DNA of 64,000 bases from Isurus oxyrinchus (Eukaryota), in assembly GCA_026770705.1 (NCBI GenBank), contig JANJGN010000189.1:372001-436000 (forward strand), read 5' to 3'. The position numbers and the translations under genes were made by a program. Of this stretch, positions 29,405-60,529 are shown one piece after another. Position 1 is the stretch's first letter, and each line of letters opens with the position of its first letter. The notes under the pieces are model-generated. The model made no database searches. It was not told where the DNA came from and saw only the letters and a list, made by a program, of their open reading frames with translations.

Positions 29405-29773
29405 TTGGACTGTCACAAGAGTGGAAAGGTGAAACTCCACGAGAGGTGACAGCGCAGGAAGGTTCGTGTGTACAGATTCCATGTCATTACAGTTATCCAT
29501 CGTGTCTGGAAAACCAACCGCGAGGTGGAGTCTGGTTTAATAATGAGGAACAGATTCCCTGGGCTCCCATTGCCTTTCACTCCAAGGATCACAGTCACGA
29601 GTTACCACGGTTCCACCATCGGACCCGGCTGTCTGGAGACCTGAAAGATGGCGACTGTTCCCTGATTATAAACAACATCAGACGGGAAGATGCAGGACCT
29701 TATTTTTTCAGAATAGAATTTGACAATGGTCCGAGCCATAACTATTACCCTGTAACCCAGCTTCACGTTTCTG
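29405..29773 (+). CDS. Siglec V-set exon (369 nt, phase 1-1) with essential Arg
   Basis: QEWK, GSCVQIPC, GDCSL and EDAGPYFFRIE: Siglec-type Cys pattern and F-strand Arg. Confidence 0.93.
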
Positions 29774-31088: not shown

Positions 31089-31385
31089 ATTTCACAGATA
31101 AACCCACGATATTCCCTGCTGAAATTATTGCAGGAAAGCGTGTGGATGTAAGCTGCACCTTCAACACAACGTGCAATGGAACAGCAGCACCTGTCTTAAC
31201 CTGGGACACTCCCACTGACGTACCTGGATCAGTCTCAAACACTGTAACTCAGCATGGTGTCACTCTGACCTATACTTCTGTTCTGACCCTGATCCCATCA
31301 CTCAAACACCACGGACACACTCTCAGCTGCAGAGTGAGATATCCATCTGTTTCATCGGAGCGGACCCTCGTACTGACTGTGCTAT
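31089..31385 (+). CDS. Siglec-like domain-2 (C2-1) exon
   Basis: 297 nt, phase 1-1; extra Cys consistent with the V-C2 interdomain disulfide. Confidence 0.92.
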
Positions 31386-31554
31386 GTAAGTACAAACACC
31401 CTTCAATCTACATTAGCTGGAATAGTATCAAATGTGCACAGCAAGCTCCCACATACTGCACTTTGTTTATAAACAAACCATTGGTATTTAACTGGTAAAA
31501 AGTGAGCCCTGACAGGCAGTACATCCTTACTACTGACTCTCCGATAGTGCATCA

Positions 31555-33300
31555 TGGACTCATAGACTCATAGACACATAGACAGAAGGAGGCCATTTAG
31601 CCCATCATGTCCATGCTGGTCAGCAACTCCCTCCCCAAGTGCATCACCTCATATTTTTCCAGGTTGAATTCCATTTGCGTCGTGATCATTTCCCCTTTAT
31701 ATAAGTCCAATTCATTTATATACACCACAAACAGCAAGTGCCCCAGCACTTTGCCCTGTGGAACCCCACTGGAAACAGACATCCAGTCACAGAAACATCC
31801 CTCCACCATCACCCTCTGCTTCCTGCCTCAGCCAATATTGGATCCAACGTGCCACTTTGCCTTGGATCCCATGGGCTCTTACTTTCTTGGCCTCTCTGCC
31901 AAGAGGCACCTTATCAAAAGCCTTCCTCAGCCCATGTCGACCACATCAAAGGCATTACTCTCATCAACACTCCTGGTGACCTCCTCAAAAGATTTGATCA
32001 GGTTTGTCAAACATGACCTTCCCTTAACAAATCCATGCTGAATATCCCAGATTAATCCTTGTCTCTCCCAGTGCAGATTCATTCTGTCCTTCAGAATTCT
32101 TACTAGTAACTTCCCCACCACCGAGGTTAGACTGACTGGCCTGTAATTTCCAGATCTATCCCTTCCTCCCTTTTTTAATAATGGGACAACATTAGCCATC
32201 CTCCAGTCCTCTGGCACCTCACCTGTGGCCAGACAGGATTTGAAAATTACTGCCAGGGCCCCTGATATCTCTTCCCTTTCCTCCCTCAACAGCTTTGGAT
32301 TCATCTCATCGGGGCTTGTGGATTTATCCACTTTTCAGGTCGCTAAACCCACTAGTACCTCCTCTCTCTGTGTTAATTTCCTCTCATATTTCACTGCCCT
32401 CCACCCTGATGTTATACCTGCATCATCCTTTTCCATTGTGAAGACTGATGCAAAGTATTCATTGAGGACTGTACCCACGTCTTCCAGGTCCACACACACA
32501 TTACCTCGATGGTCCCTAATCAGCCCCACTCTTTCCCGAATTATTCTGCTGCTCTTTACATATTTAAAAAACCCCTCTGAGTTTTGCTTTATTCTACTCA
32601 CCAGTGCTTTCTCATGCACTCTCTTATCTTTCCTCATGTACTTTTTCAGTTCCCATCTGCACTATTTATACTCCTCTAGGGACTCTGCTGTATTGAGCCC
32701 TCAGTATCTGCCATAAGCTTCTCTTTTTTCTAAATCTAAACCTTTATGTTCCTTGTCTTCCAGGGTTCTCCAGACTTGGTCTCCCTCTTTGTCTTTACAG
32801 GAAGATATCTGCTCTGTACTCTCGCTATTCCCTCCTTGAATGCCTCCCACTGCTCTGACACAGTTTTATCTGCAAAGAGCTTCTCCCAGTCCACTTGGGC
32901 CAAATCATATCTCATCTTAGTAAAATTAGCCTTTCCCCAGTTTAGAATTTTTATTCCCAGCCCAAACTTATCCTTCTCCATAACTGTCCTAAATCCAATT
33001 GAGTTACAGTCACTATCTCCCCTACTGATACGCTTTCCACCTTCCCCGGCGCTTTTCCATATATTAGGTCCAGAACTGTCCCCTCCCTTGTTGAGCTTTC
33101 TATGCACAGGCTAAAAATCTTCTCCTGGATGCAACTTCAGAATTTTTCTCCCTCCCTACCTTGCTCACTAAAGCTGTCCCAGTTAATATTTGGGTAGTTA
33201 AAATCCCTGAGTATTACTGCTTTATTATTCTTACACATCTCTGAAATGTGATCACATGTTGGATTGTCCATCTCTCCCTGACTGTTTGTTGGTTTTATAT
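31555..33300 (-). mobile_element. CR1 LINE (endonuclease/RT remnants), absent from the inverted paralogue
   Basis: VPEDWRMANVVPL, NYRPVSLTSVVGK, SGVPQG; CATAGA tandem tail. Confidence 0.92.
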
Positions 33301-33369
33301 CTTGAGTCTATGAGTTCACTGGTTGAGTAAATTCGAATTGCACTCCTTCATATACACTTGTTAGTTGAT

Positions 33370-33575
33370 AAAAACAAAAAAACTGCGGATGCTGGAAATC
33401 CAAAACAAAAACAGAATTACCTGGAAAAACTCAGCAGGTCTGGCAGCATCGGCGGAGAAGAAAAGAGTTGACGTTTCGAGTCCTCATGACCTCAGTTCTG
33501 TCGAAGGGTCATGAGGACTCGAAACATCAACTCTTTTCTTCTCCCCCGAAGCTGCCAGACCTGTTGAGTTCTTCT
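33370..33575. mobile_element. Fold-back Penelope terminal-repeat insertion with probable 9-bp target-site duplication
   Basis: Inverted arms; flanks TTAGTTGAT and TTAGCTGAT. Confidence 0.7.
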
Positions 33576-33834
33576 TAGCTGATGCTCGCTATCAATAACC
33601 AAGAGAGACCTACGTTAGAACAAGCTGATTATTTATTGTAACAGAGGGCAGAGCACTAAATCCTTGCATGCTCCCACAGCCACCTCCAGCTCTAGACTTA
33701 CAGTTAACCAGTGGCCCACACTGTCCAGTGATTGGTCAGTACTGTCACATGGTTTATCCACTTGTATTCTCTTAAAGGTACCTGGCACTCCACATTATCA
33801 CAGGAGGCCTATAGTACACACATAACAGCGTGTT

Positions 33835-34250
33835 TGCCTCCTCAGCACTGACCCTTCTACAGTGCAGCACTCCCTCATTACTGTCTCTCTAATAGTGTAA
33901 TGATCCCTCAGTAGTGCTCCTCCAACATTGCACTGGTCAATCAGAACTGACGCTCTGACTGTGCAGTTTTACCTCAGCAGTAACCCTCCTACAGTGCAGT
34001 GCTCCCACAGTACTGTCCCTCCTACAGTGCAGCACTCCCTCAGGACTGACCCTCTGACAATGCAGCACTCCCTCAGTACTGAACCTCTGGCAGTGCAGCA
34101 CTCCCTCAGTACTGACTCTCTGACAGTGCAGCACTCCCTCAGTACTGACCCTCTGACAGTGCAGCACTCCCTCAGTACTGACTCTCTGACAGTGCAGCAC
34201 TCCCTCAGTACTGACCCTCTGACAGTGCAGCACGCCCTCAATACTGAACT
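33835..34250. repeat. 33-bp minisatellite (reverse orientation)
   Basis: Tandem units. Confidence 0.9.
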
Positions 34251-34379
34251 GAAGTGTCTGCCTGGATTACGGGCTATGTGGTGAAAGAACCTACATTGAC
34301 ATCACACCTTTCACATTCTCAGTGTCTTTCAAAGTGCTTCACAGTCAGTCTAAGTTAACTGATCTGTATTTGTTTTTAG

Positions 34380-34661
34380 ACGCACCACGGAATCTCTCAA
34401 TTACTTCTCCAGATATGATTAACGCTTCATCGATCAATATAATTGAGGGGAATTCTGCAGTGATAATCTGCTCTGTCGAGAGCTTCCCAGCTTCTAACCT
34501 GACGTGGCGACATCTTAATGTCCCAATGAACAGAACAAGTTCCAACAATGAGCTGTGGTTGGTGATTCCTCACGTTACATCCAGGGATACTGGAGAATAT
34601 CAGTGTGTGGCAGAGAATGAACATGGAGCAGTGGAGGGATTCATAACCATCACTGTGGAAT
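34380..34661 (+). CDS. C2-set Ig exon (282 nt) with four N-glycosylation sequons
   Basis: NLS, NAS, NLT, NRT; canonical Cys/Trp; AG/GT boundaries. Confidence 0.93.
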
Positions 34662-36366
34662 GTGAGTTACACAGACTTTAATATTTCTCTCATCTCCGAA
34701 CACATATACTCAGATGCTCTCCCACGCACACACACACACAAGCACTCACAAATGTACAAACCCAAAGTGCATGCACACACACAATCCCACACTCATGAGC
34801 ACACAGAAAGACACACTCACACACAAACACAGTAGTACACACTTCCCTGTGAGTTACCTGACCTCCCTCAGTACTGCACTGGAGAGTTCTCCTGGATTCT
34901 GGGATATGTGTTCCCATTCATATTTATCGAAGAATATCCAAATTACAAAGTCTATTCCAGAAACTCACATGCACAAAGATTCCAACAGATACTCCCCACC
35001 TCTCCGTGTCTCTCTCTCCTCCTTTAAGAAGCTTCCTAATCCCGAACTCTTGCCTGCCCTAACTCCTCCTTATCATGCCCTGTGTCAAATTTTTTGTGTA
35101 TCTGAGAGAAAGGGAGAGATAAGGAAGTTTAGGAAGGGATTTCCTGTTAGTGAAGAGCTTACTTCTTTTTCTCACCTTTCCAGTGTTCAGTTTTGCCATC
35201 ATGTCCAATGACCCTGTTTATAATGGGGGCATCCTATGTAAACGTCACACTGTCTTTACATCCTCCCACCAGTGGTGGCACTGTGGTGCTTAAGCTTGCA
35301 CCTCCCAGCTTTTCAGCCAACTTCACTTCACAATTTGCTACACATGCTGTAAGGTCATCAAAATTAACATATATCAAATGGTAGATTTGATAATACAGTT
35401 TATTGAAAGGTTCATCCGCGCTCTGGGAAGGGTTTACACTCTCCAGGAAGCAAAAATAGGCTGGATGTTGGAGAGTTCATCTTTTCCCAGAGAGTAGGGA
35501 TCCTCGGGAATGTGCTGTCAGTGGGTGTGGTGGTTGCTGTCTCTCTGTTGCCTTCAAGAGGGATCTGGAGTGGTTACTAACTCGGGGAGAGATCATGGAA
35601 GCGGAGAATGGTACAGCACAGGAGGAGGCCATTCAGCCCATTGAGCCTGTGCCAGGTCTTTCAATGTTCTATCCAATCAGATCCACTAACCACCACACCA
35701 CTTTGCCCCCATCTTCTTCCTTCAAGTGTTTATCCAATTTCCCTTTTGAAAGTTCCTATTGAATCTGCTTCCACTGCCCTTTCAGGCAGCACCTTCCAGA
35801 TCACAACAACTCGCTCTGTCAAAACAAATTCTCCTCATCTCCCCCTCCGGTTCGTCAATCTGTGTCCCTCTGGTTACCGACCCTCCTGCCCCTTAAATAC
35901 ATCGATACTGTTCACCTCAACCACTCCCTGTGGGAGCGAGTTCCACATTCTCCCCTCTCTCTGGGTAAAGATTGGAACTGTTTATTAAGTGGGGCGTGTA
36001 AGTCCGTGGGGGAGTCCATCTCGATCCTGCCCGATTCGCACACGCGTCCGAGATGGATTTCCACCCTGCACTAAACGTTTCCAGAATTTTCTACAGCACA
36101 ATCCTGTACACAGCGATGGAGAGAAACATTGGACAGGGAGTCCAACAGCACAATGATCCATTCTCACCAATGTTCCACGCTAAGGGGAAAGTTGCGATTG
36201 TCCACTCTTAGAGTGTTTACAATGAAAACATTCATTCCACATTGAATCCCAGTGGATGGCTCAATATTACAGCAAATGTTGCAATGATATGAAGCTTGAT
36301 TGTTCAGCCAGAGTGAGAGATTGAAAGCGGAGAGTCAGTGATGATTTCTTTCTGTGTGTTCTCTAG

Positions 36367-36551
36367 ACAGTGGAGGAGAGATTCTGCATGTGATCCTGAT
36401 CCTGGGAATACGAGCTGTGATTTTCCTTGTGGCTGTGGTTATCACTATCTTCTGGAGTCTGTGTCTGGGAGAGACAAACAGTGAAAGGAAGTCGACAGAC
36501 TGTTTGAAGCTTTGTACAGCAACAATCTGGTCAGTCAGTGCGGACAAATAA
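36367..36551 (+). CDS. Arg-containing TM/terminal exon SGGEILHVILILGIRAVIFLVAVVITIFWSLCLG...SADK*
   Basis: ctctag acceptor, phase 1; AATAAA at 37586-37591. Confidence 0.8.
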
Positions 36552-37944
36552 CGTGTGATGTTGGGTTAAGTTGTAATGAAACTGGTCAGTGTCCTGGTTA
36601 GAATCACCTTCGTATCAGAGAGGCATTCCAGCACAGTAGGAGCCCATTCAGCCCATTGAGTCCATGCTGTCTCTGTGTAGAGCAATCCACTCAGTCCCAT
36701 TTCCCCCTCTCTATCCCCGTATCTCTGCAAGTTTATTTCCCCTCAAGTGTCCAACCAATTTCTGTTTGATATCGTTCATCGTCTCCACTTCCACCATCCT
36801 CGTAGGCAGCGAGTTCCAGCTCATTACCACTTGCTGTGTAAAAAAGTTCCTCCTCACATCCCCCCTCTGCCCAAAACCTTCAATCTGTGTCCCCCAGTCC
36901 TTGTACCATCAGCTAATGGCAACAGCTTCTCTTTGTCTGCCTTATCTAAACCCATCATCATCTTGTACACCTCGATCAGATCCCCCCTCAATCTCCTTTC
37001 CTCCAAGGAGAACAACCCCAGCTTCTCCAACCCAACCTTGTAGCTAAAATCCCTCATCCCTGGACCCATTCTGCTCAATCTCCTCCCCACCCTCTCAAGG
37101 ACCCTCACTTCCTTCCGAAAATGAGGAGACCAGAACTGGACACAATACTCTAGTTGTGACCTAACCAGAGCTTTATAAATGTTCAGCATAACCTCCCTGT
37201 GTTTGTACTCAATCCCTCGATTTATGAAAAGCTTATTCTTTCCATCAGCACAAACAGCAATTTCCAAGCGGACTCCCATCAGCAGACAGAGTGCAATGAA
37301 ACATCGGCATGCCTGCTTCTTAATGTACGGAGAGAAACCTGGAACGAGAGATTCTCCTTCTTCTCCTCAGCAAGCTGAAACTTTTCCTTATACCTGGTGC
37401 TCCCCAGTCCTGCTGTGTGGACACATCATAACCACGGCATTGTCTGGCTGTGTGCAGCCAACATGGTCGAATAGGAATGAACAGAAATGTGACGTTGCTA
37501 AACTCTGTTCTCTGATTGGAATGTGCTTTCTGAATGCTGCACCTTTTTCATGCTGCGATAGATTGTAAGAAGCATTTGGGTTATGAATAAAATTACATTG
37601 ATTAACACAAGTGATTAAAATGCTCAGCCTGTTCTGTAGCTATTTATAGATTAAAATTCTTATTTTGCTGCCAAATTCTTGGCTCAAAGACATTACTTCA
37701 TGTTGTCACGTTTTCCAATCAGATGAATTCCTGTGCCCATCTTTATAATAGAAATTTCCAATGTAAACATGTCACATTGTAGCTGCACACACTCCTGCCA
37801 GTGGGTGGTGCGATATGAAGGCTGCCTTGCTGCTCAGAAACAGCGAGAAATATTCCTGTTATGTGCATGAACTTCATGTGTGCATGAGACACAGGCATCA
37901 AATGCAATTTTGTACAATTTGTACAATGTTCTTTAGACAGCACA

Positions 37945-38515
37945 GCACTCCCTCTGTTCAAACCCTCCAACAGTGCAGCACTCCCTCAGTTCAAACCCTC
38001 CGACATTGCAGCTCTACCTCAGTTCAAACCCTCCGACAGTGCAGCACTCCCTCAGTTCAAACCCTCCGACAGTGCAGCACTCCTTCAGTTCAAACCCTCT
38101 GACAGTGCAGCACTCCCTCAGTTCAAACCCTCTGACAGTGCAGCACTCCCTAAGTACTGAACCTCCGACAGTGCAGCACTCCCTCGGTACTGAACCTCTG
38201 ACAGTGCAGCACTCCCTCAGTTCAAACCCTCCGACATTGCAGCTCTACCTCAGTTCAAACCCTCCGACAGTGCAGCACTCCCTCAGTTCAAACCCTCCGA
38301 CAGTGCAGCACTCCCTCAGTTCAAACCCTCTGACAGTGCAGCACTCCCTCAGTTCAAACCCTCTGACAGTGCAGCACTCCCTAAGTACTGAACCTCCGAC
38401 AGTGCAGCACTCCCTCGGTACTGAACCTCCGACAGTGCTGCACTCCCTCAGTTCAGACCCTCTGACAGTGCAGCACTCCCTCAGTACTGATCCTCCGACA
38501 GTGCTGCACTACCTC
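37945..38515. repeat. 33-bp minisatellite (reverse orientation, TTCAAA variant)
   Basis: Tandem units. Confidence 0.92.
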
Positions 38516-38889
38516 ACTAATTAGCGACTGGAAGGTTTATGTTCATTTATCTTTATTTTCCATTCCTATTGAGCAATGGAGCTCCTGATTTGTCACCTTT
38601 CTGTACCTCGTCCAATGCTTCTTTTATCAGGACTTCCACATCGATGTGAAAGAGCCATGATGATAGCAGACAGTCGCACAATGGGAATGGCACTAGGCCA
38701 GTGATCCAGAGGCCCAGGTGAATGCTTTGGAGGTAAGGGTTCAAATCCCACCACGGCAGCTGCAGGAATTTAGATTCGATTAATCAATAAATTTAATTGA
38801 TTGATACATTTTTTTCTTATTCATTTCAGGGATGTTGGTGTCACTGGCTAGGCCAGTATTTGTTGCCCATCCCCAATTGCCTTTGAGAA

Positions 38890-39840
38890 CATATGGATAT
38901 CTGAGTTAGGATCAGGAGTAGGTCACTCAGCCCCTCGAACCTGCTCCGCCATTCAGTAAGATCATGGCTGATCTGATTGTCACCTCAACCTCACATTCCT
39001 GTCTACCCCCAATGACCTTTCACCCCCTTGTTAATCAAGAATCTATCTAGCTCTGCCTTAAAAATATTCAAAGACCCTGTTTCCACTGCCTTTTGAGGCA
39101 GAGTGTTCCAAAGACTCACTACCCTCTGAGAGAAAACATTTCGCCTCATCTCTATCTTAAATGAGCGACCCCTTATTTTTAAACCATGACCCCCTAGTTC
39201 TAGATTCTCACACAAGAGGGAACATCCTCTCCATATCCACCCTGTCAAGACTCCCCTGGATCTTAAAGGTTTTAATTAAGTTGCCTCTTACTCTTCTAAA
39301 CTCCAGTGGATACAAGCCTAACCTGTCCAACCTGACCTCATAAGACAACCCGACCAATCCTGGTATTAGTCTAGTAAACCTTCTCTGAACTGCTTCTAAT
39401 GCATTTACATCTTTCTTTAAATAAGGTGACCTTACTGTACAGAGTACTCCAGATGTGGTCTCACCAGTGCCCTGTACAACTGAACGTAACCTCCCTACTT
39501 TTCTATTCAATTCCCCCACAGTAAATTATAACATCCCATTAGCTTTCCTCATGACCTGCTGTATCTGCAAACCAGCCTTTTGTGATTCATGCACGAGGAC
39601 ACCCAGATCCCTCTGCATCTCAGAACTCTGCAATCTCTCACCTTTTAGATAATAATCTTCCTTCTTGTTCTTTCTGACAAAATGAACAATTTCACATGCG
39701 CCCACATTATACACCATTTGTCAGATCTTTGCCCACTCACTTAACCTATCGATGTCACTTTCTAACCACCCTACATCCTCTTCACAATTTACTTTCCAAC
39801 CTATCTTTGTGTCAGCAGCTCATTTAGCCGCCATTCCTGG
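38890..39840 (-). mobile_element. CR1 LINE 3' end
   Basis: LEAVQRRFTRLIPG and QRDLGVLVH motifs. Confidence 0.9.
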
Positions 39841-40304
39841 GCAGTCCAGGTGCTTCTCCACCGAGGTTCAAATGAGCACAGTTTATATATTTTTTACTCT
39901 CAGTTACAAGGTAATGGTATTAGTTAGACAAAGGCCACAGCACAATGATCCTCCGGTGGGCTGATAATTGTGTTCTTGTACAGTAATTACAGGGCAGAGA
40001 CTGGCTATTGTCCTTTTGAGACAGCAAAGAATCTATGTTTGTTCGCTACAAAAGGTTTCCGGAGGCTGACTGGATGTGGTTCAAGGCCATCGGACGGTGC
40101 GAAATAACCTTCCCCATTTCTTGATTAAGTCACCCTGTGTCCTTGTGTGTGTGTCTCCCATTTCCTCATTGCAAATTTACAGCTGAGCCCTTTGTACAGG
40201 TTTTTAGCTTTCACGTAAGGATGTGATTGTCTGTGTACGCTTTGTCACCCTAGCTGCTGGTCCTGGCTGGCTCTTTAAAATAAATCCAAATTTTCTGCAC
40301 CTTC

Positions 40305-41380
40305 AATGAGATTCTCTCTTGTTGGAGCTGGTCATTGCCTGGCACTTATGTGGCATGAATGTTACTTGTCACCTGTCAGCCCAAGCCTGGATGTTGTCCA
40401 GGTCTTGCTGCATTTGGACATAACTTGCTTCAGTATCTGAGGAGCCGTGAATGGTGCTGAACATTGTGCAAACATCAGCAAACATCCCCACTTCTGACCT
40501 TATGATGGAAGGAAGGACATTGATGAAGCAGCTGAAGATGGTTGAGCCTCGGACACTACCCTGAGCAACTCCTGCAGTGATGTCCTGGAACTGAGATGAT
40601 TGACCCCCAACAATCACAACCATCGTCCTTTGTGCTGGGTATGACTCCAAGCAGCAGAGAGTTTTCCCCCGATTCCCATTGACTCCAGTTTTGCTCGGGC
40701 TCCTTGTTTTGCCACATTCAGTCAAATGCTGCCTTGATGTCAAGGGCAGTCACTCTCACCTCACCTCTGGAGTTCAGCTCATTTATGCATGTTTGAACCA
40801 AGGCTGTAATGAGGCCAGGAGCTGAATGATCCTGGTGGAACACAAACTGAGCGTTAGTGAGCAGGTTCTTGCTAAGCAGGTGCTGCTTGCAAGCGCTGTT
40901 GATGACCCCTTCCATCACTTTAGTAATGATCAAGAATAGACTGCTGGGGAATTGGCTGGGTTGGATTTGTCCTGCTTTTTGTGTACAGGACGTACCCCAT
41001 AGCCGGGTAGTTGCCAGTGTTGCAGCTGTACTAGAAAATTCCAGAAAAGCTTGGCTAGGGGCGCAGCAAGTTCTGGAGCACAAGTCTTCAGTACTATTGC
41101 CGGAATAATGTCAGGGTCTGGAGCATTTGCAATATCCAGTGCCTTCAGCCCTTTCTTGATATCACGTGGAATTAATCGAATTGGCTAAAGATTGGCATCT
41201 CTGATGCTAGGGACCTCCGGAGGAGGCCGAGATTGATCACCCACTCAGCACTTCTGGCTGAAGATTGTTGTGCATGCTTCAGTCTTGTCTTTTGCACCGA
41301 TGTGCTGGGCTCCTCCATCATTGAGGATGGGGATATTTGTGGAGCCTCCTCCTCCAGTGAGTTGTTTAATTGTCCACGAC
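40305..41380 (-). mobile_element. CR1/L2-group LINE reverse-transcriptase remnant
   Basis: ALDIKAAFD, AGVAQGSVRG, MFADV. Confidence 0.88.
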
Positions 41381-43727
41381 TGGATGTGACATCTGGAATG
41401 CGAAGCTAGTCTCAGTAATGGTGACCATGAAACTAAGGCCAATTGTTGCAAAAACCCATCTGGGTCACTAATGCCCTTTGGGGAAGGAAACCTGCCGTCC
41501 TTACCCATTCTGGCCTACGTGTGACTCCTGACCCACAGCAATGTGGTTGACTCTTAACTGGCCCCTGAAATGGCCGAGCAAGCTACTGAGTTATATCAAA
41601 ACCCGCCACAGACCAGTCAAACCAGGTGAACTGCAGCACTTCGAAAAGACAGCTCAGCACCCCCTTCTCCAGGGCTCAGTCTGGAACAGGTAACAAACGC
41701 TGTCCACATCCCGTGAAAGAATTTTGGTAAAAAGGTAGCCGTGTATCACCACCCACGGCCAGCGCCAACCCCCCCACCCCTACCTGATTGCACCAGTTTC
41801 AGATTACACCAGGTCAATGAACGGATAGAAACTCAAACCAATGAGATGAGCACAGAGCAGGATCAAGCCAGAGAGAGTTGGTGGGAAGAATTGGGAAAGC
41901 AACAAAAAAGGCAGAGCGGACACTAACACTATAACAAAGTAAAGACCAGAGGAGGAAGGAAGCAAGTGCGAAGAGGAATTGAGAGTAGAGCTGGTAGGCT
42001 GCTTGTCGAAGCCAAGGACCCTCCATAGGTCACACCCACAGTGCTTTTGGGGAGGGAGTTACATGATTTTGACCCAGGATCATCAAGTTTTGCACTGGCA
42101 GAGCCTTTAAAGAAAAGGGACCTTCACTACCCGTGTCCCCCGCCCAACAAAGCTGTTGACATGCCGAGTCCACCTGTACAGGCAACCTCCAGACAGTTGA
42201 CTACAAAGGCCATTGCAGCTGCTGAATATGACTTCCAGTTTCAAAACCTTCATGAATACAAGGATGGGGGATTCAGCAGGAATATTCCTGCACATCCTGT
42301 GGCAGATCCTGTAAATAAAAGGGACCTTCACTCACTCCTCAAAGCTGCTGACCTGCTGATTTACATCTACAGGCAACCTCCAAACAGTCGACTAGAGAAG
42401 ACAATGCAGCTGCTGAATGTGACTCCTAGTTTCAAACCCTTCACTCTGGAAAGAAGGAATCCAGAGCAATGGGCCTCACTATGATACTTGACAGAAACTG
42501 ATTTTAACTCTCATCTCTAAGTATTATTTTTCCTTTGCTTACATTTTAATCCTTGCACCTGATGGCTTTATCGCTTCAACTTAAATAACTTTCAGCAGGA
42601 GCCAGGTTCAAATTGAATGGACAAGCTGGCTTGGGAGGCCAAAAGGCCTACTCCTGCTTCTGTTTATTTATGTTTGTGTTGTTATGTAGTGGAACTAGAG
42701 AGGTTATAGCAGTTATGAGAACATTAAGCAAACAGCAGCAAGAATTGAACACCTACGTTGTGGTTTATGAAAAGGTTTTCAACTTGGTCAACTGGTAAAA
42801 TCTGTTGAAAGTGGGCTATCATGGCGTGTGGCCTTTGTGTGATATTTGTAACAACGTTCTCGATGTCGGAACAGTTTGCATTGAACAAAGCTGATCTTTA
42901 CCCAGAACTTCAGAGGAAGTTCCCTGGTGTGGGGGGCATGGTGGGGGGGGAGGGTGAGGGAGAGACAAGTAGCCTGAAATACCAAGCCAGACACTTTGTG
43001 AAGACAAAAGTTGTTTATTCATTTTTTTTTTACAAAGCACAATCTTTACAATTAAAGTCCCGACAAGATGATGGTGAATCATGAACACATTGTCGGGGTG
43101 AATCTGTGCCCGGGAGCATAAAGCAGCAAAATCAGGAGCCCGCTTTACATCTCTCTGAATTTTAACTATCATTAACCCCAGTAACATCCATTCAAATGAC
43201 TTAGTCATAAGATTCCTCACACATTCACTTGCACACTCACACACCCACACCCACACAGACACACTGACACACTCACTCATTCACATTGACACACACATAT
43301 TGACAGTCACACACACCCACACAGACACACTGACACACTCACTCATTCACATTGACACACACATATTGACAGTCACACACACACACACACACACACGCTC
43401 ATAAAGACAGACACAAACACAGTCACGTGAGGTGAATAGTGTCGATGTATTTAAGGGGAAGCTGGATAAACACACGAGGGAGAAATGAATAGAAGGATCT
43501 GGTGATGGGGTGAGATGGAGAAGGGGTGGGCGGAGACTCGTGTGGAGCAGAAACACCAGCATGGAACAGATGGGCCAAATGGCTTCTTTCCCTGCTGTAA
43601 AACGCAGGTAAAGTTTCAGTTGGAATTAATGAACAGGGCCTGTGTGAAATAGATTGCTAAGCAGTAGATAAGGAGGGGAGAGGCTGTGGCATGGTGCAGG
43701 ATGACCTTGCGTGAATGAGGCCAGGGT

Positions 43728-43844
43728 CTAATATCTACAGCAGATACCACAAGTCTCATTTGGTTCTCTCCAATTACAGCAGTGACAGCAGAATCTGCAG
43801 AGCTGCTGTCTGCTCATTCTGTTCTGGCGCTGCAGCAAGGAGCC
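43728..43844 (-). CDS. HAMP: Hepcidin-like exon 3: GSLLQRQNR|MSRQQLCRFCCHCCNWREPNETCGICCRY*
   Basis: cttttccag acceptor, phase 0, RxxR site, C-xx-CC-x-CC-xn-CG-x-CC-xx-stop pattern. Confidence 0.93.
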   Translation of the reverse strand, partial: GSLLQRQNRMSRQQLCRFCCHCCNWREPNETCGICCRY

Positions 43845-43949
43845 CTGGAAAAGCAGGAGCACAATAGGTGAGAACATTCCGGAAAGAAAGAAGGCACCGC
43901 CTCCCTTTGACTCTGGCATCATTTCAATCAGGCGCGTCATTGGAAGGAG

Positions 43950-44790
43950 GATGGCGCATTTCTCTAGCACCTTTCCCCACCTCAGGATGGCCCAAAATGT
44001 TCAACAGCTGATGGAAGGACTTTTTCTGAAGTGAGCTCACCGCTGTAATGTAGGAAACGCAGCAGGCAATTCACGCACAGCAAGATCCCACAAACAGAAA
44101 TGTGATAATGGCCCCATTTTCAGTTTTTTACCAATGTCAGTTGAGGGATAAATGTTTGCCCCAGGAAAGTGGACATAACTCCACCCCATCCAGCCCCCAC
44201 CACCCCCTCCACACATACCCCCCAACTCCTGACGCACTTCATCTAAATTGTGGCCATGGAATCCTCTATATCCACCTGAGAGGGCAGATTGGTTGCCCCA
44301 GTTTAATGTCTCATCTGAAAGACAGCGCCTTCAACAGTGCAGCACCCCCTCAGTACTGACCCTCCGACTGTGCAGCACTCCCTCAGTACTGACTCTGACA
44401 ATGCAGCACATCCTCAGTACTGACCCTCCAACAGTGCAGCACTCCCTCAAGACTGACCCTCTGACAATGCAACACTCCCTCAGTACTGACCCTCCGACTG
44501 TGCAACACTCCCTCAAAACTGACCCTCTGACAATGCAGCACTCCCTCAGTACTGACCCTCCGACTGTGCATCCCCCCGCCGGTACTGACCCTTGGACAGT
44601 GCAACACTCCCTCAAGACTGACCCTCTGACAATGCAGCACTCCCTCAGTACTGACCCTCTGACAATGCAGCACACCCTCAATACTGACCCTCCGATAGCT
44701 CGGTAATTCCTCAATTACACCTGGTGGTCCTTTTAACTCAGAGCTGAGAGTCGCAGAGAATCGAGCAGACACCCTGAACTGACACTTGCA
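43950..44790 (-). mobile_element. Deu-domain (SacSINE1/AmnSINE-like) SINE with internal 33-bp expansion (44335-44700)
   Basis: CACAGCAAGATCCCACA and GTTTAATGTCTCATCTGAAAGAC motifs run into the satellite. Confidence 0.75.
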
Positions 44791-46232
44791 GTGCAAGTAC
44801 TGGGAGTGCGCTGGTCATTATCATGCTGCTGTCTGTGGGATCTTACTGTGCGCCAATGGCTGATTCTTTTCCCACAGTACATCAGTGACCTCACAGGAAA
44901 GAAAAAAAGCACTTGCTTGTCTGCGAAACACTTTGGGACGTCCTGAAGTGTTGGAAGGCGCTAGAGAAATGCAAGTCCTCTTTGTCTTTCACTCAATCCT
45001 CTAAGGTGTCTGTTGATTAACCAGCCTCTCGGTGTATGATGTAGGCCTGGTTATAAACAGGTAGAAGGATCAAATATCAAAAATGCTTTGGCTGACAGTC
45101 AAACCGATTGTGCATTCGGAGAGATTAGATATGGTCTGCGCACAATGACTCCAGTCTCAGGCACTGACTGCCACCTGGGGTCTCCCTTCCACATAACACT
45201 CACAACTTGCATTTACACAGCGCCTCTGACATTGCAAAATGTCCCAGCCCACATTACCGGAGCGTAAATCAGAGAGAAGTCTAACACTGAGTCACATATG
45301 GAGATATTAGGGTTAGGTGACCAAAAGCTTGGTCAAAGATGTCAGTTTTTAAGGAACGTCTTAAAGGAGAGAGAGAGAGAGAGAGGCAGAGAGGTTAAGG
45401 GAGGGTATTCCGGAGCTCAGGGCCCCAGGCAGCTGAAGGCACGGCCGCCAATGGTGGAGCGATGGGAATCAGGGGGACCCGGGAGATGCAGTAATTTCAG
45501 AGATTTTGGAGGAACATCGGGACCGGAGGAGGTGTTCTCCTGCTCCATATCTCTCTCTCTCTTCCTCTCATCCACTCCTCCTCTCCCTGTCTCTCTCTCT
45601 CCTACTCTTCCTCTCAATTGCCCTCTCTCCCAATCTTTCTCTCCTCTCTCCCTTTTCCTGTCTCTCTCCCTCTCTCTCCCCTGTCTCATTCTCCCACTCT
45701 GTATCTCTCCCTCTCTCTCACACTATTTTTGTACCTTGCGCTCACTCTGTAACTCTCCCTTCCCTGTTAATTTCTCTCTCTTGGACAATCTCTCTTCCCT
45801 TTTCACTTTCCCTCACTCTGCATCTCTTTAATTTCTCCCTCTGTCACTCTCTCCCACCTATGTTCTTTCCCTTTCACCCCTCCCCGTCCCACTCTCTGTC
45901 TCTCTCTTCCAATCCCTCCCTCCCCCATTCCATCCCTCTCTCCGACTCTCGACTCCCAGCCTCTCTTTAACCCACTCCCAGGCTGGATCAGTCTCCCTCT
46001 CACTATTCCCGGCGTGGGTTACATTTAAAATTCCTGTGGGGATATGTTCACTTCCTTGGAATTGCCTCTTCCCAGCTTTGCAAAAAAAAGGGGGGGGGGG
46101 GCTCCATTTCAAACATGCCTCCTGAGTATAACCGAGACAGACTGCCACTGAAATCAGCTTGAAATCAGAAAACTTTCTGTGGAAGAAACGAGCAGGGAGA
46201 AACCTTAAAATAAGGAATGAATTTCCACCTAC

Positions 46233-46289
46233 CGTGTCCGGGGAATCCACAGATTTCTCAATCGTCGAAGAACCTAAAGCAGTGTCAAC
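46233..46289 (-). CDS. HAMP: Hepcidin-like exon 2 (propeptide VDTALGSSTIEKSVDSPDT)
   Basis: tttctttttgcag acceptor, gtaggt donor, 57 nt, phase 0-0, acidic. Confidence 0.8.
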
Positions 46290-46389
46290 CTGCAAAAAGA
46301 AAGAATTTATCAGGGAGAAAGTGAGAGGAGGATTGAGGGAGAGGGAGAGAGAGAGAGAGAGGTACAGGAGAGAGAGGGGGAGGAGGACA

Positions 46390-47200
46390 GACTTGCATTT
46401 CTCTAACGCCTTTCACCACATCCCAAAGCATTTCACAGCCACTGAAGGATGTTTTTGAAGTGCACTCACACTGTAGGAAATGTGGCAGCTGATTTGTGCA
46501 CAGCAAGATCCCACAAATAGCAATGTGATCATGGCCTAGATCATCTGTTTTTGGTGATGTTGGGTGAGGGATAAATATTGGTGCCAGGACACCGGGGAGA
46601 ACTCCCCCTGCTCTTCCTCCAAATAGTGGCTGTGGGATCTTTCACACCCGCCCGAGAGGGCAGACGGGGGACTCAGTTTAATGTCTCATTCAACATTGTT
46701 GTGCTCCCTCAGTACTAACCCTTTGACACTGCAGCACTCCCTTAGTATTAACCCTTCGATAGTGCTGCGCTCCCTCAGTACTGTCCCTCCGTCAGTGCAG
46801 CTCTATTTCAGTACTAACCCTTCGACACAGCAGCACTCGCTCAGTACTGACCTCCGACAGTATAGCACTCCCTCAGTACTGTCCCTCCAATAGTGCAACA
46901 CTTCCACTCTACTGACCCTGTAACAATGCAGCACTTCCTCAGTACTGACCCTCCGTCAGTGCAGCGCTCCCTCAGTACTGACCCTCCGACAGTGCAACAC
47001 TTCCACAGTACTGACCCTGTAACAATGCAGCACTTCCTCAGTACTGACCTCCGACAGTATAGCACTCACTCAGTACTGTCCCTCCAATAGTGCAACACTT
47101 CCACACTACTGACCCTCTGACAGTGCAGCACTCCCTCAGCACGGAGTGTTGACCGACGTTATGGGACTGAATTCCCTGGAGTGAGACTCAGACCAGAGAT
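46390..47200 (-). mobile_element. Near full-length Deu-domain SINE with internal 33-bp expansion (46700-47140)
   Basis: Tail GACTTGCATTT, body GGACACCGGGGAGAACTCCCC, head remnant after the array. Confidence 0.8.
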
Positions 47201-47214
47201 TTAGGTAGGGTTGT

Positions 47215-48650
47215 TCCGGCTGGAGGAGGTTACAGAGATAGGGAGGGTTGTAGAGGCTGTAGGAGATAACAGAGATAGGGAGGGTTCTAGACGCTGCAGG
47301 AGGTTACAGAGATAGGGAGGGTTGTAGGGGCTGTAGGAGGTTACAGAGATAGGGAGGTGAGTAGGGGCTGTAGGAGGTTAAAGAGATGGGGGGGTTGTGG
47401 GGGCTGGAGGAGGTTACAGAGGTAGGGAGGGTTGTAGAGGCTGGAGGAGGTTACCAAAATAGATACTGTTGTAGGGGCCACAGTAGGTTACAGAGATAGG
47501 GAGAGTTATAGTGTGGAGAGGACGTTATAGAGTTCATGAGCATTGTAGGGGCTGGAGGAGGTTACAGTGATTCTGAGGGTCGTGGGGCCTGGAGGAGATT
47601 ACAGAGATAGGGAGGGTTGTAGGGTCTGGAGGAGGTTACAGAGATAGGGAGGGTTGTAGGGTCTGGAGCAGGTTACAGAGATAGGGAGGGTTGTAGGGTC
47701 TAGAGGAGGTTACAGTGATCATGAGGGTTGTGGGGCCTGGGGGAGGTTACAGAGATAGGTAGGGTTGTAGGTGCTGGAGGAGGTTACAGAGATAGGGAGG
47801 GTTGTAGGATCTGGAGGAGGTTACAGTGATCGTGAGGGTTGTGGGGCCTGGGGGAGGTTACAGAGATAGGGAGTGTTGTGGGGACTGTAGGAGGTTACAT
47901 AGATAGGGAGGGTTGTCGGGTCTGGAGGAGGTTACAGAGATAGGGAGGGTTATAGGGACTGGAGGAGGTTACAGAGATAGGGAGGGTTGTAGAGACTGTA
48001 GGATGTTACAGAGATAGGGATTGTTGTAGGGGCTGGAGGATGTTACAGAGATAGGGAGGGTTGTAGGGGCTGGAGGAGGTTACAGAGATAGGGAGGGTTG
48101 TAGGGGCTGGAGGAGGTTACAGAGATAGGGAGGGTTGTACGGGCTGGAGGAGGTTACAGAGATAGTGAGGGTTGTAGGGGCTGGAGGAAGTTACAGAGAT
48201 AGGGAGGGTTGTAGGGGCTGGAGGAGGTTACAGAGATAGGGAGGGGTGTAGGGGCTGGAGGAGGTTACAGAGATAGGGAGGGTTGTAAGGCCTGGTGGAG
48301 GTTACAGAGATAGGGAGGGTTGTAGGGGCTGGAGGAGTTTACAGAGATAGGGAGGGGTGTAGGGGCTGGAGGAGGTTACAGAGATAGGGAGGGTTGTAGG
48401 GCCTGGTGGAGGTTACAGAGATAGCGAGGGTTGTAGGGGCTGGAGGAGTTTACAGAGATAGGGAGGGTTGTACGGGCTGGAGGAGGTTACAGAGATAGGG
48501 AGGGTTGTAGGGGCTGGAGGAGGTTACAGAGATAGGGAGGGTTGTACGGGCTGGAGGAGGTTACAGAGATAGGGAGGGTTGTAGGGGCTGGAGGCGGTTA
48601 CAGAGATAGGGAGGGTTGTAAGGCCTGGTGGAGGTTACAGAGATAGGGAG
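47215..48650 (+). repeat. 37-bp G-rich minisatellite (GGAGGAGGTTACAGAGATAGGGAGGGTTGTAGGGGCT), about 38 units, in hepcidin intron 1
   Basis: Tandem units. Confidence 0.95.
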
Positions 48651-48851
48651 TGGCTGAGGAGGGATTGAAAACAAGAATGAGAATTTCAGGGGAAACGACA
48701 GAAGGAAATGATGTTAAATTCATAGAGGGCGACAATATTAAAGGCACGAACATAATAATATCAAACTGCGGAAAAGACCAGTCTATCTGGATGGTAGACG
48801 TAGAGTCATGTGCAAGAAACACCTCACCCAGAGGGACATCTCTTAGCTTAC

Positions 48852-48944
48852 CCTCGACAAGGAGAAGAAGTGACTCAGCTGCAGGGAGAGCAGCAAAGTC
48901 AGAGTGAACAAGACAAGTCGCCATTTCATCTGGGAGCTTCCCAT
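48852..48944 (-). CDS. HAMP: Hepcidin-like exon 1 (signal peptide MGSSQMKWRLVLFTLTLLLSLQLSHFFSLSR; alternative ATG at 48929)
   Basis: Hydrophobic leader, AGG|gtaagc phase-0 donor, TATA-like box upstream. Confidence 0.85.
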
Positions 48945-49009
48945 CTCTGCCTGTCTCTTCTGATCTTCTGGCTCTGCTTTGATGCTTTGGTTTGTAACTA
49001 GAGGAGCTT

Positions 49010-49230
49010 CCTGCTCTTATACCTGAAACACTTGAAGGGGACAGCCGCGGGTGGGTAGCTGTGTGGTATCACACCCATTTCTGGATATTGCAGTGTCGAT
49101 GTTCCCTGTCCCACTGGCCTGGGACCAGCAGTAAGGTCACTGGGACATTGACTGTCTGGCGCCGAGAACTATCAGTCCCTCCGCAACGCCCTTCACCTTG
49201 TGCAAATATGTGTTCATATTGATGCAACAC
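49010..49230 (-). promoter_or_regulatory. Hepcidin-like promoter
   Basis: TATAAG 49021-49016; GGCGCC 49158-49163 with adjacent AGAC; C/EBP-like TTGTGCAA 49198-49205 and TGATGCAA 49220-49227. Confidence 0.65.
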
Positions 49231-51309: not shown

Positions 51310-53060
51310 ATATCTGTAACCTCCTCTCTCTCTCCCTTTCCTCCAGCCCCTACAACCCTCCCTTAGGCAGCCTCCACCTGCCTCTACAATCCTCCCCATC
51401 TCTGTAACCACCTTCAACCCCTACACCCCTCCCTATATCTGTAACCACCTCCAACCCCCACAACCCTCCCCATCTCTGTAACCACCTTCAACCCCTACAC
51501 CCCTCCCTATACCTGTAACCTCCTCCAGCCCCTGTAACCCTCCCTATCTCTGTAACCTCCTCCAGCCCCTACATCCCTCCCTATCTCTGTAACCTCCTCC
51601 AACCCCTACAACCCTCCCTATCTCTGTAACCTCCTCCAACCCCTACAACCCTCACTATCTCTGTAACCTCCTCCAGCCCCTACAACCCTCACTATCTCTG
51701 TAACCTCCTCCAACCCCTACAACCATCCCTATCTCATTAACCTCCTCCAACCCCTACAACCCTCACTATCTCTGTAACCTCCTCCAACCCCTACAACCCT
51801 CACTATCTCTGTAACCTCCTCCAACCCCTACAACCATCCCTATCTCATTAACCTCCTCCAACCCCTACAACCATCCCTATCTCATTAACCTCCTCCAACC
51901 CCTACAACCCTCCCTATCTCTGTAACCTCCTCCAACCCCTACAACCCTCCCTATCTCTGTAACCTCCTCCAGCCCCTACAACAATCCCTATCTCTGTAAC
52001 CTCCTCCAGCCCCTACAACCCTCCCTATCTCTGTAACCTCCTCCAGCCCCTACAACAATCCCTATCTCTGTAACATCCTACAGTCTCTACAACCCTCCCT
52101 ATCTCTGTAACCTCCTCCAGTCCCTATAACCCTCCCTATCTCTGTAACCTCCTCCAGCCCCTACAACAATCCCTATCTCTGTAACCTCCTCCATCCTCTA
52201 CAGTCCTCCCCATCTCTGTAACCTCCTCCAACCCTTCCTATATATGTAACCTCCTCCACAAGCCCATACAATCCTCTCTATCTCTGTAACAACCTCCAGC
52301 CCCACAACACCCTTATACCTGTAACCTCCTAGCCACTGTAACACTCCCTTATCTCTCAAGCCTCCACCAGCCTTGACAATGCTCCCCATCTCTGTAACTT
52401 CCTCCAACCCCCAGTACCCGCCCTATTTCTGTAATCTGTTCCAGTCCCTACAACCCTCCCTATCTCTACAACCTGCTCCACCCCCTGCAACTCGCCCTAT
52501 CTCTGTGTCATCCTCCAGCCCCTAACAACCCTCCCTATTTCTGTAACCTCCTCCAGCCCCTACAACCCTCCCTATCTCTGTGTCCTCCTCCAGCCCCTAC
52601 AACCTTCCCTATCTCTGTAACCTCCTCCAGCCCCTACAACCTTCCCTATCTCTGTAACCTCCTCCAGCCCCTACAACCCTCCCTATCTCTGTAACCTCCT
52701 CCAGTCCCTACAATCCTCCCCATCTCTGTAACCACCTTCAACCCCTACACCCCTCCCTATATCTGTAACCACCTCCAACCCCCACAACCCTTCCCATCTC
52801 TGTAACCACCTTCAACCCCTACACCCCTCCCTATCTCTGTAACCTCCTCCAACCCCTACAACCCTCCCTATCTCTGTAACCTCCTCCAACCCCTACAACC
52901 CTCACTATCTCTGTAACCTCCTCCAACCCCTACAACCCTCACTATCTCTGTAACCTCCTCCAACCCCTACAACCCTCACTATCTCTGTAACCACCTTCAA
53001 CCCCTACACCCCTCCCTATACCTGTAACCTCCTCCAGCCCGTACAACCCTCCCTATCTCT
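51310..53060 (-). repeat. 37-bp minisatellite in inverted orientation, about 47 units
   Basis: Reverse complement of the 47.2-48.6 kb unit. Confidence 0.95.
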
Positions 53061-58409: not shown

Positions 58410-58445
<36 letters not shown>

Positions 58446-59653: not shown

Positions 59654-59688
<35 letters not shown>

Positions 59689-60471: not shown

Positions 60472-60529
60472 GTGAGTTACTGCAAACTCCAACATCACTC
60501 ACACACGCACACACACACACACACACACA

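What the first reader, a model, noticed from the sequence alone, without database searches (positions are those of the whole stretch)
43728..43817. Atypical mature hepcidin: extended loop with an N-glycosylation sequon and no His3/Phe4-type N-terminus
Seen: MSRQQLCRFCCHCCNWREPNETCGICCRY (29 aa), with 8 residues between Cys5 and Cys6 including N-E-T. Known: human hepcidin has 4 residues there (HRSK), and its DTHFPI N-terminus is needed for ferroportin regulation and metal (ATCUN) binding. A second RxxR (RMSR) would release a 26-mer starting with Gln. Inference: a divergent, possibly glycosylated, antimicrobial-type or otherwise repurposed hepcidin.
Basis: partly seen in the sequence, partly recalled or inferred. 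Interest (0 to 1): 0.8.

Follow-up and report, generated by a model that had tools for sequence, protein, structure and literature searches.

The report
Long-loop shark hepcidin gene copy
This is a real, intact three-exon gene of the hepcidin family (the vertebrate iron hormone and defence peptide) whose peptide has an unusually long hairpin loop and an altered start, but it is one minor copy of a multi-copy family.

Summary
On the minus strand, 43728-43817 reads MSRQQLCRFCCHCCNWREPNETCGICCRY plus stop. It has eight Cys, eight residues between Cys5 and Cys6 including N-E-T, overlapping RQNR/RMSR sites, and no His3 or hydrophobic residue 4.

It is the last exon of an intact three-exon gene (exons 48852-48944, 46233-46289, 43728-43844). 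It passes Pfam Hepcidin (31.6 bits, cutoff 27). Spliced contigs from one likely-RNA sample use exactly these exon borders; two DNA runs show no such joints. The long loop is not an assembly error.

This exact copy is a minor or silent member. The dominant transcript has Asn for His and Leu for Ile. One contig from the same sample continues after ...RQNRMS into H-L-S-I-C-M-Y-C-C-G, a standard hormone-type start.

I read the long-loop form as a shark-lineage side branch. It parallels teleost Hamp2 but probably arose independently. Its function, its glycosylation and any ferroportin activity are untested. Its low net charge (+0.8 to +1.5) argues against a strong bactericidal role.

The scan has already noted at least nine sister copies on other DNA of this genome. 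I found no paper on elasmobranch hepcidin sequences.

The parts
49016..49021 (-). TATAAG box, 77 nt before the ATG
   Evidence: This is 1 site where 118 of 500 shuffles reach 1, so it is a position-based reading and not a statistical one. The RNA contig bins reach to 49100.
48852..48944 (-). Exon 1 coding part, 31 codons: MGSSQMKWRLVLFTLTLLLSLQLSHFFSLSR. It has a basic n-region and a 12-residue hydrophobic core, which I read by eye as a signal peptide. The donor is GTAAGC.
   Evidence: The spliced joint 46287->48850 (cut +2 = 46289|48852) is seen in 11 contigs of X1 and 2 of X2, and in none of X4 or X11.
46290..48851 (-). Intron 1, filled by a 33-nt repeat array (46704-47139) and a 37-nt satellite (47202-48650, 39 copies)
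46233..46289 (-). Exon 2, 19 codons of pro-region (VDTALGSSTIEKSVDSPDT). Acceptor TTTTTGCAG, donor GTAGGT.
   Evidence: both flanking joints appear
43845..46232 (-). Intron 2, with a 33-nt repeat array at 44334-44695
   Evidence: The joint 43843->46232 (cut +1 = 43844|46233) is seen in 8 contigs of X1 and 3 of X2, and in none of X4 or X11.
43728..43844 (-). Exon 3 coding part: 38 codons (GSLLQRQNRMSRQQLCRFCCHCCNWREPNETCGICCRY) plus TAG. Acceptor TTTTCCAG.
   Evidence: Pfam Hepcidin PF06446, E 2.1e-7, 31.6 bits against a cutoff of 27.
43809..43829 (-). Two overlapping minimal convertase motifs, RQNR and RMSR. They would release a 29-mer (MSRQQLC...) or a 26-mer (QQLC...).
   Evidence: Cleavage itself is inferred, not shown.
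43731..43817 (-). Predicted mature 29-residue peptide with 8 Cys (spacings 2,0,1,0,8,2,0), pI 8.2, net charge +1.5
43752..43775 (-). Enlarged Cys5-Cys6 hairpin loop NWREPNET. Its last three codons (43752-43760) are the N-E-T sequon.
   Evidence: Contigs of an independent DNA run of the same species (X4 record 26, 43702-43813, 0 gaps) and of a second species (X11 record 9, 43592-44035, 0 gaps) have the same length.
43430..43727 (-). 3' untranslated region shared with the expressed copies. Contigs of X1, X2 and X11 leave the window's sequence at 43429.
   Evidence: depth bins 43400-43781 and loose ends at 43429. No AATAAA or ATTAAA lies within 428 nt after the stop.
49154..49163 (-). GGCGCCAGAC, a BMP/SMAD-element-like motif 219 nt before the ATG. 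This is a weak lead only.
   Evidence: 1 GGCGCC, and 30 of 500 shuffles reach that count. The consensus motifs were recalled, not taken from a tool.

Best explanation
This is an intact copy of a multi-copy 'long-loop' branch of the hepcidin (HAMP) family. Earlier notes of this scan call the genome a shark; I could not verify the species. The gene lies among Siglec/CD22-like immunoglobulin genes.

Shown: the three-exon structure, canonical splice sites, hepcidin-family membership, the eight-Cys framework with an 8-residue Cys5-Cys6 loop, and abundant spliced transcripts of this gene type.

Inferred: the 88-codon precursor enters the secretory pathway through its signal peptide. A furin-type convertase cuts at RQNR or RMSR. 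The resulting 29- or 26-residue peptide folds into the four-disulfide hepcidin hairpin, with a tip loop about twice the usual length that may carry an N-glycan.

One substitution does two things. Position 3 is Arg, where the co-expressed standard-type contig has His. That removes the X-X-His metal-binding start, and it also creates the second RxxR site, which would trim the N-terminus to three residues before Cys1.

A transcript with a standard start exists in the same sample. I therefore think the long-loop type is a side branch that has given up, or weakened, ferroportin control and serves another secreted role such as defence or immune modulation. It is analogous to teleost Hamp2 but of separate origin.

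This particular copy (His71, Ile84) contributes little or nothing to the transcript pool.
For: Family membership: Pfam Hepcidin above its cutoff. The best solved-structure match is bass hepcidin 1S6W, sharing CRFCC.CC and CG.CCR with a 4-residue gap in the loop.

Gene model. Spliced joints at exactly 43844|46233 (8 contigs X1, 3 X2) and 46289|48852 (11 X1, 2 X2), with GT..AG ends on the gene strand. None appear in DNA runs X4 and X11.

Loop length: the same in an independent DNA run of the same species and in a second species, with 0 gaps.

Minor status of this copy: the dominant transcript differs at 43784 (His->Asn; 20 contigs X1, 12 X2) and at 43745 (Ile->Leu; 29 and 10 contigs).

Standard-type paralogue: the X1 loose end at 43812 reads, in frame after RQNRMS, H-L-S-I-C-M-Y-C-C-G. 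One X2 contig joins 43812 to 43731 with the mature-peptide segment replaced (I translated the loose end by hand).

Neighbourhood: V-set plus Ig_CD22 and C2-type Ig exons.

Precedent: Hamp1 but not Hamp2 regulates ferroportin in sea bass (PMC5665920, title, abstract and passages). [quoted passage not shown] The first nine residues carry the ferroportin activity (preprint 10.1101/2020.03.16.993006 passage).
Against: No function was tested. The long-loop type, not the standard type, holds nearly all the summed contig depth in the one RNA sample. That would suit a main hormone as well as a defence peptide.

The pre-Cys1 segment after RQNR has the usual six residues, and it keeps Ser2, Leu6, Cys7 and Phe9. 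The loop is the part that stays outside ferroportin. Residual ferroportin binding is therefore not excluded.

Net charge is low for a bactericidal peptide.

The standard-type paralogue rests on one contig in each of two runs of a single sample, and I did not see its full sequence. The runs are only guessed to be RNA, and contig depth is a poor measure of expression (tool's own warning).

No relative from another species could be fetched as protein.
Confidence: 0.6

Rival explanations
1. The long-loop peptide is still the animal's working iron hormone. It binds ferroportin through its six-residue N-terminus and conserved C-terminus, and the enlarged (perhaps glycosylated) loop merely sticks out of the transporter.
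For: It holds almost all the hepcidin-type contig depth in the RNA sample. The hepcidin loop is 'highly variable' and 'largely extracellular' in the ferroportin complex, while both termini are buried (PMC8235187 section 5). After RQNR the peptide has six residues before Cys1, like the sea bass and croaker Hamp1 peptides, with Ser2, Leu6, Cys7 and Phe9 in place. A GGCGCC-AGAC element lies in the promoter.
Against: Position 3 is Arg, not His, and position 4 is polar Gln. The activity of the hormone lies in its first nine residues. RMSR could remove half of that segment. A standard-type transcript coexists. The promoter motif is not significant (30 of 500 shuffles reach it), and no STAT-type site was found (0 sites).
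Confidence: 0.25
2. This particular copy is a silent or nearly silent duplicate: intact by sequence but not contributing peptide. The family may be functional all the same.
For: At the diagnostic His codon (43784) the window's letter has about 4058 of 516791 depth units in X1 and about 72 of 162610 in X2. A different His-bearing copy (Pro->Ser at 43763, Tyr->Phe at 43732; 6214-6850 units, 2 contigs each in X1) can account for that remainder. Contigs of X1, X2 and X11 all leave the window's sequence at 43429, where this copy has a CA-rich 66-nt repeat block. No AATAAA or ATTAAA lies within 428 nt of the stop.
Against: The reading frame, all four splice sites, the TATA box and the start-codon context are intact. 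Contigs drop rare variants and their depth is a poor measure. Only one sample, of unknown tissue, was seen.
Confidence: 0.4
3. The extra loop residues are an assembly or sequencing error in an otherwise ordinary hepcidin.
For: None found.
Against: Contigs from four runs in three studies cover the loop with no listed insertion or deletion between 43728 and 43844. These are X1/X2 likely RNA, X4 DNA of the same species, and X11 DNA of a second species (tables 4 and 8). Two indel rows of the table were not shown to me.
Confidence: 0.01

Closest known systems
Teleost Hamp2-type hepcidins (sea bass Hamp2; hybrid bass hepcidin, PDB 1S6W; croaker Hamp2 isoforms)
   Same: It shares the eight-Cys framework and the near-identical core CRFCC.CC ... 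CG.CCR[FY]. It has a three-exon gene, lacks the Q-S-H start, occurs as several diverged copies beside a standard-type gene, and sits in a family with high transcript abundance.
   Different: The Cys5-Cys6 loop has 8 residues against 5. It carries an N-E-T sequon. Its net charge is much lower than that of the bactericidal isoforms (+0.8 to +1.5 against +5.7 for croaker Hamp2-5). Hamp2 genes were found only in Percomorphaceae and Ovalentaria (PMC6240063 passage), so a cartilaginous-fish branch would be an independent duplication. I built no tree.
Iron-regulatory hepcidin (human hepcidin-25; teleost Hamp1)
   Same: It belongs to the same Pfam family and has the same cysteine framework. It has six residues before Cys1 if cut at RQNR, with Ser/Thr-type residue 2, aliphatic residue 6 and aromatic residue 9. 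It lies beside Siglec/CD22/MAG-type genes. The human USF2-HAMP-MAG-CD22 order is recalled, not tested.
   Different: Arg replaces His at position 3, so there is no X-X-His metal site, and Gln replaces the hydrophobic residue 4. The convertase site is a minimal RxxR rather than a run of basic residues. The loop is 8 residues against 4-5.
N-terminally truncated human isoforms hepcidin-20/-22
   Same: Cutting at RMSR would leave only three residues before Cys1, like a truncated isoform. [quoted passage not shown]
   Different: Here the short form would be genetically programmed by a second convertase motif, not produced by later trimming. Which site is used is unknown.

Membership tests
Hepcidin family (Pfam PF06446) | Profile match above the curated gathering score | tested here: met
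   31.6 bits against a cutoff of 27, E 2.1e-7, residues 7-39 on profile positions 24-52 of 53
Hepcidin family (Pfam PF06446) | Eight cysteines in the order C-x2-CC-x-CC-loop-C-x2-CC | tested here: met
   Spacings are 2,0,1,0,8,2,0. Five published teleost peptides have the same pattern with a loop of 4-5.
Hepcidin family (Pfam PF06446) | Three-exon gene with the mature peptide in exon 3, encoding signal peptide, pro-region and mature peptide | tested here: met
   Gene model; both introns are removed at the predicted borders in contigs of X1 and X2. The three-exon rule is quoted from PMC6240063. The signal peptide was judged by eye only.
Hepcidin family (Pfam PF06446) | RX(K/R)R convertase motif before the mature peptide | tested here: inconclusive
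   Only minimal RxxR motifs are present (RQNR, RMSR), with no basic residue at P2. The RX(K/R)R wording is from the PMC3325200 abstract. Cleavage was not tested.
Hepcidin family (Pfam PF06446) | Four-disulfide beta-hairpin fold | not testable with these tools
Iron-regulatory hepcidin (hepcidin-25 / Hamp1 type) | N-terminus of the type x-[S/T]-H-hydrophobic-x-[I/L]-C (Q-S-H-L-S-L-C in sea bass, Q-S-H-I-S-L-C in croaker) | tested here: not met
   M-S-R-Q-Q-L-C has Arg3 and Gln4.
Iron-regulatory hepcidin (hepcidin-25 / Hamp1 type) | Binds ferroportin and causes its internalisation | not testable with these tools
   This needs a cell assay.
Iron-regulatory hepcidin (hepcidin-25 / Hamp1 type) | Promoter with BMP/SMAD and STAT3 response elements | tested here: inconclusive
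   There is one GGCGCC abutting AGAC at -219 (30 of 500 shuffles reach it) and 0 TTCNNNGAA sites in 500 nt. The motif definitions were recalled.
Teleost Hamp2-type (defence) hepcidin | Member of the Hamp2 clade, which is confined to Percomorphaceae and Ovalentaria | not tested
   No tree was built, because no related full-length proteins could be fetched. The taxon range is quoted from PMC6240063 and makes membership unlikely.
Teleost Hamp2-type (defence) hepcidin | Strongly cationic mature peptide, linked to bactericidal activity | tested here: not met
   Net charge is +1.5 (29-mer) or +0.8 (26-mer), against +5.7 for croaker Hamp2-5. The dependence on arginine is from the PMC6240063 passage.
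N-glycosylated secreted peptide | N-x-S/T sequon (x not Pro) in a luminal segment | tested here: met
   N-E-T lies at 43752-43760. The rough chance of a sequon in the 8-residue loop is about 0.03, and in the whole 29-mer about 0.12 (using recalled average amino-acid frequencies).
N-glycosylated secreted peptide | The sequon is actually occupied | not testable with these tools
   The site is 10 residues from the C-terminus and next to a Cys. That class depends on STT3B and favours NXT (PMC3613688), and it needs MagT1 near cysteines (PMC4137057 abstract).

The most novel reading that the evidence does not exclude
Cartilaginous fishes run two hepcidin-type ligands. The long-loop form, carrying an N-glycan on its exposed loop, would be the abundant circulating one. 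It would act on a receptor other than the classical Cys326 ferroportin, for instance the second ferroportin paralogue without that cysteine that Nemeth and Ganz report in some cartilaginous fish (PMC8235187). That would be a second hormone-receptor pair at the base of jawed vertebrates, and the first naturally glycosylated hepcidin.
Probability: 0.06. Interest if true: 0.85.

Novelty: new variant of a known kind. Interest (0 to 1): 0.45.

Why it matters
Hepcidin and its binding cysteine on ferroportin are said to appear first in fish, with the cysteine first seen in cartilaginous fish (PMC8235187). Shark hepcidins therefore sit at the origin of vertebrate iron-hormone control. In the held library I found no paper that describes their sequences.

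An amplified, highly transcribed branch with a doubled loop, a possible glycan site and a re-cut N-terminus shows the family split into types in this lineage too, apparently independently of teleost Hamp2. It offers a natural experiment on which parts of the peptide ferroportin control needs.

It is also practical for annotation. The word search found no such protein in the collection, although that blank is not proof of absence.

For this single copy the weight is smaller. It is one minor member among many.

Tried and rejected
1. Word-index protein search with exon 3. No candidate shared three 5-residue words. This is a blank, not proof of absence.

2. Full HMMER scan of 1.84 billion representatives with the 38-residue exon 3. 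It gave 2 hits at E up to 0.001. Both are long proteins translated from repeats (577 and 1246 aa), so they are chance matches. A 38-residue query has too little power at this library size, so nothing follows about relatives.

3. ESM Atlas. The best score was 0.76, to a plant hypothetical protein, which is no lead.

4. Solved structures. Only bass hepcidin 1S6W matched, at E 0.47 and 0.19. RLIM RING-finger chains at E 2.8-6.6 are chance cysteine matches. No human hepcidin chain was listed.

5. Structure prediction.

6. A second hepcidin copy or relic exons in the window. None were found by pattern, blastn or tblastn.

7. Promoter motif scan. Nothing was significant: GGCGCC was reached by 30 of 500 shuffles, TTGCACAA by 140 of 500, and there were 0 STAT, HNF4, NF-kB or E-box sites.

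8. Assembly-error reading. Rejected.

9. Strong antimicrobial reading. Weakened by the low charge.

10. Species identity. Run and organism names were coded, so 'shark' rests on earlier notes of the scan and was not verified.

11. Literature. Searches found no description of an elasmobranch hepcidin sequence. The nurse-shark plasma proteome lists hepcidin among nurse-shark proteins without a whale-shark orthologue (PMC9207270 passage). One search listed 5 papers holding hepcidin, 'N-glycosylation site' and 'mature peptide'; by title none concerns a glycosylated hepcidin. Preza et al. 2011 was not held.

Full report
**What is in the sequence.** The coordinates hold nothing meaningful on the plus strand. 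On the minus strand, 43728-43817 reads MSRQQLCRFCCHCCNWREPNETCGICCRY followed by TAG. The open frame continues upstream to a polypyrimidine tract and an AG acceptor. The cysteine spacing is 2,0,1,0,8,2,0. The hepcidin-type cysteine pattern occurs once in all six frames of the 64 kb window. Neither blastn nor tblastn finds a second copy or relic exons. Exon 3 passes the curated Pfam threshold for Hepcidin (31.6 bits against 27; E 2.1e-7). It uses 33 residues for 29 profile positions, four more than the family model. Against solved structures the only family hit is bass hepcidin 1S6W. It shares CRFCC.CC and CG.CCR, with a 4-residue gap placed in the loop.

**The gene.** Exon 1 (48852-48944) starts at an ATG 77 nt after a TATAAG. 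It encodes 31 residues with a basic start and a 12-residue hydrophobic core. Exon 2 (46233-46289) encodes 19 pro-region residues. Exon 3 (43728-43844) encodes 38 residues and the stop. All introns are phase 0 with GT..AG ends. Exons were searched apart.

**Reads.** One call laid four runs on 43400-49100:
- X1 and X2: one sample, guessed to be RNA.
- X4: DNA of the same coded species, from another study.
- X11: DNA of a second coded species.

Contigs of X1 and X2 skip both introns at exactly my borders: 43844|46233 in 8 and 3 contigs, and 46289|48852 in 11 and 2 contigs. Near-identical variants of each joint appear in 1 contig each. X4 and X11 show none of these joints. This confirms the splicing, and it also makes the 'RNA' guess for X1 and X2 credible. 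Summed contig depth is 10^5-10^6 over the exon bins and about 10^3 or less over most intron bins. The tool warns that contig depth is a poor measure of expression, so I take from it only that transcripts of this gene type are abundant in that one sample. X4 (record 26, 43702-43813) and X11 (record 9, 43592-44035) cover the loop without gaps. No indel row is listed inside exon 3, though 2 indel rows and 43 substitution rows were not shown to me. The long loop is therefore real and shared with a second species.

**This copy is a minor one.** Most contigs differ from the window at two places:

| Place | Change | Contigs (X1 / X2) | Depth with the other letter (X1) |
|---|---|---|---|
| 43784 | His to Asn | 20 / 12 | 512733 of 516791 |
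| 43745 | Ile to Leu | 29 / 10 | 433511 of 513624 |

The small remainder carrying His can be explained by another copy seen in X4 and X1. That copy also has Pro to Ser in the loop and Arg-Tyr to Ile-Phe at the C-terminus. I therefore have no evidence that this exact copy is transcribed. Contigs of X1, X2 and X11 also leave the window at 43429, where this copy has a CA-rich 66-nt repeat block. The family holds at least four mature-peptide variants of equal length.

**A standard-type sister.** One X1 contig follows the window down to 43812 (the Ser codon after RQNRM) and then diverges. Its 30 listed letters, reverse-complemented by hand and read in frame, give H-L-S-I-C-M-Y-C-C-G. One X2 contig (depth 6460) matches the window on both sides of 43732-43811, with that stretch replaced. 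The same sample thus holds a transcript with a window-like pro-region and 3' UTR but a different mature peptide. Its start, M-S-H-L-S-I-C, resembles Q-S-H-L-S-L-C of sea bass Hamp1 and Q-S-H-I-S-L-C of croaker Hamp1. This rests on one contig per run of a single sample, and I did not see the rest of the peptide. Several earlier notes of the scan say the same; they are not independent proof.

**How it most likely works.** The steps are as follows.
- Shown: family membership, gene structure, splicing and abundance of the type.
- Inferred: secretion, convertase cleavage, four disulfides and the hairpin.

The His-to-Arg difference at position 3 has two consequences. It removes the X-X-His start, and it creates RMSR, a second minimal convertase site that would leave only Q-Q-L before Cys1. 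The first nine residues of hepcidin reproduce its action on ferroportin (preprint 10.1101/2020.03.16.993006, passage). In sea bass only Hamp1, not Hamp2, regulates ferroportin (PMC5665920). I therefore think weakened or lost ferroportin control is the most likely state, with the standard-type sister acting as the hormone.

The loop does not bear on this question. In the complex it is variable and extracellular (PMC8235187 section 5), so even a glycan there need not block binding. That keeps the rival 'still the hormone' reading alive at about one in four. A direct bactericidal role is doubtful because the net charge is only +0.8 to +1.5. Croaker isoforms with few arginines were inactive.

Glycosylation is possible. 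C-terminal NXT sites are modified by STT3B after translocation, about as efficiently as internal ones (PMC3613688). Sites near cysteines, however, need MagT1 and must be reached before folding (PMC4137057 abstract). I put it at roughly one in three.

**Context.** Exons around the gene encode V-set plus CD22-type first Ig domains and C2-type Ig domains, partly in inverted duplicates. This fits the HAMP-MAG-CD22 neighbourhood that I recall from human chromosome 19, which I did not test.

**Searches for relatives failed.** The word index gave nothing. The full HMMER scan gave only two repeat-derived false hits. The Atlas gave nothing. These blanks say little, given the query length and the length window of the tools.

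**Novelty and verdict.** The result is a new variant of a known kind: a hepcidin with a doubled loop, a sequon and a re-cut N-terminus, amplified in a cartilaginous fish. I found no paper on it. The scan itself has reported at least nine sister copies on other DNA of this genome. The copy in this window is a minor member, so interest for this item is moderate.

Noticed in passing
window 43732-43812 (contigs of runs X1 and X2 laid): A contig in the RNA-like sample shares the pro-region and 3' UTR with this gene but replaces the mature-peptide segment. Its first ten codons read H-L-S-I-C-M-Y-C-C-G, a standard hormone-type hepcidin start. The shared flanks with a swapped 80-nt core suggest gene conversion, or selection confined to the mature peptide.
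   Followed up: partly
window 47202-48650 and 51339-53060: A 37-nt satellite (39 copies inside intron 1) recurs in inverted orientation about 2.7 kb upstream of the gene (82-90% alike). The promoter and exon 1 therefore lie between two inverted arrays.
   Followed up: partly
window 44334-44695, 46704-47139, 20161-21503, 33840-34247, 37936-38516, 4182-4622, 18568-19155: A 33-nt repeat (unit ...CTCCCTCAGTACTGACCCTCCGACAGTGCAGCA) forms arrays in both hepcidin introns and at many other places in the window. It gives very high depth in the DNA runs of both species.
   Followed up: partly
window 2715-10287 versus 27910-38320: Inverted duplicate blocks (84-97% alike) carry Siglec/CD22-like Ig exons, for example 8895-9352 against 30960-31417 at 97%. 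Two related receptor genes face each other.
   Followed up: partly
window 58397-61576: Three tandem copies (84-86% alike, about 1.05 kb each) each hold a C2-type Ig exon with the motif ...YQCVAENEHGAVEG.... This is either exon amplification inside one receptor gene or a set of decayed copies.
   Followed up: no
window 45045-46232: One X1 contig joins 45045/6 to exon 2 with GT..AG-type ends. It may be a rare alternative exon or acceptor inside intron 2.
   Followed up: no
window 43242-43429: Contigs of three runs (X1, X2, X11) all leave the window at 43429, next to a CA-rich 66-nt repeat block (2.3 copies). This copy's 3' flank differs from that of the expressed copies and of the second species.
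   Followed up: no
window 49154-49163: GGCGCC abuts AGAC 219 nt before the ATG, resembling a BMP/SMAD response element. It is not significant on its own (30 of 500 shuffles reach it).
   Followed up: partly
window 24794-27052, 31927-33107, 39208-41083: Long ORFs look like retroelement gag and reverse-transcriptase pieces. I judged this from the translations only, with no family scan.
   Followed up: no
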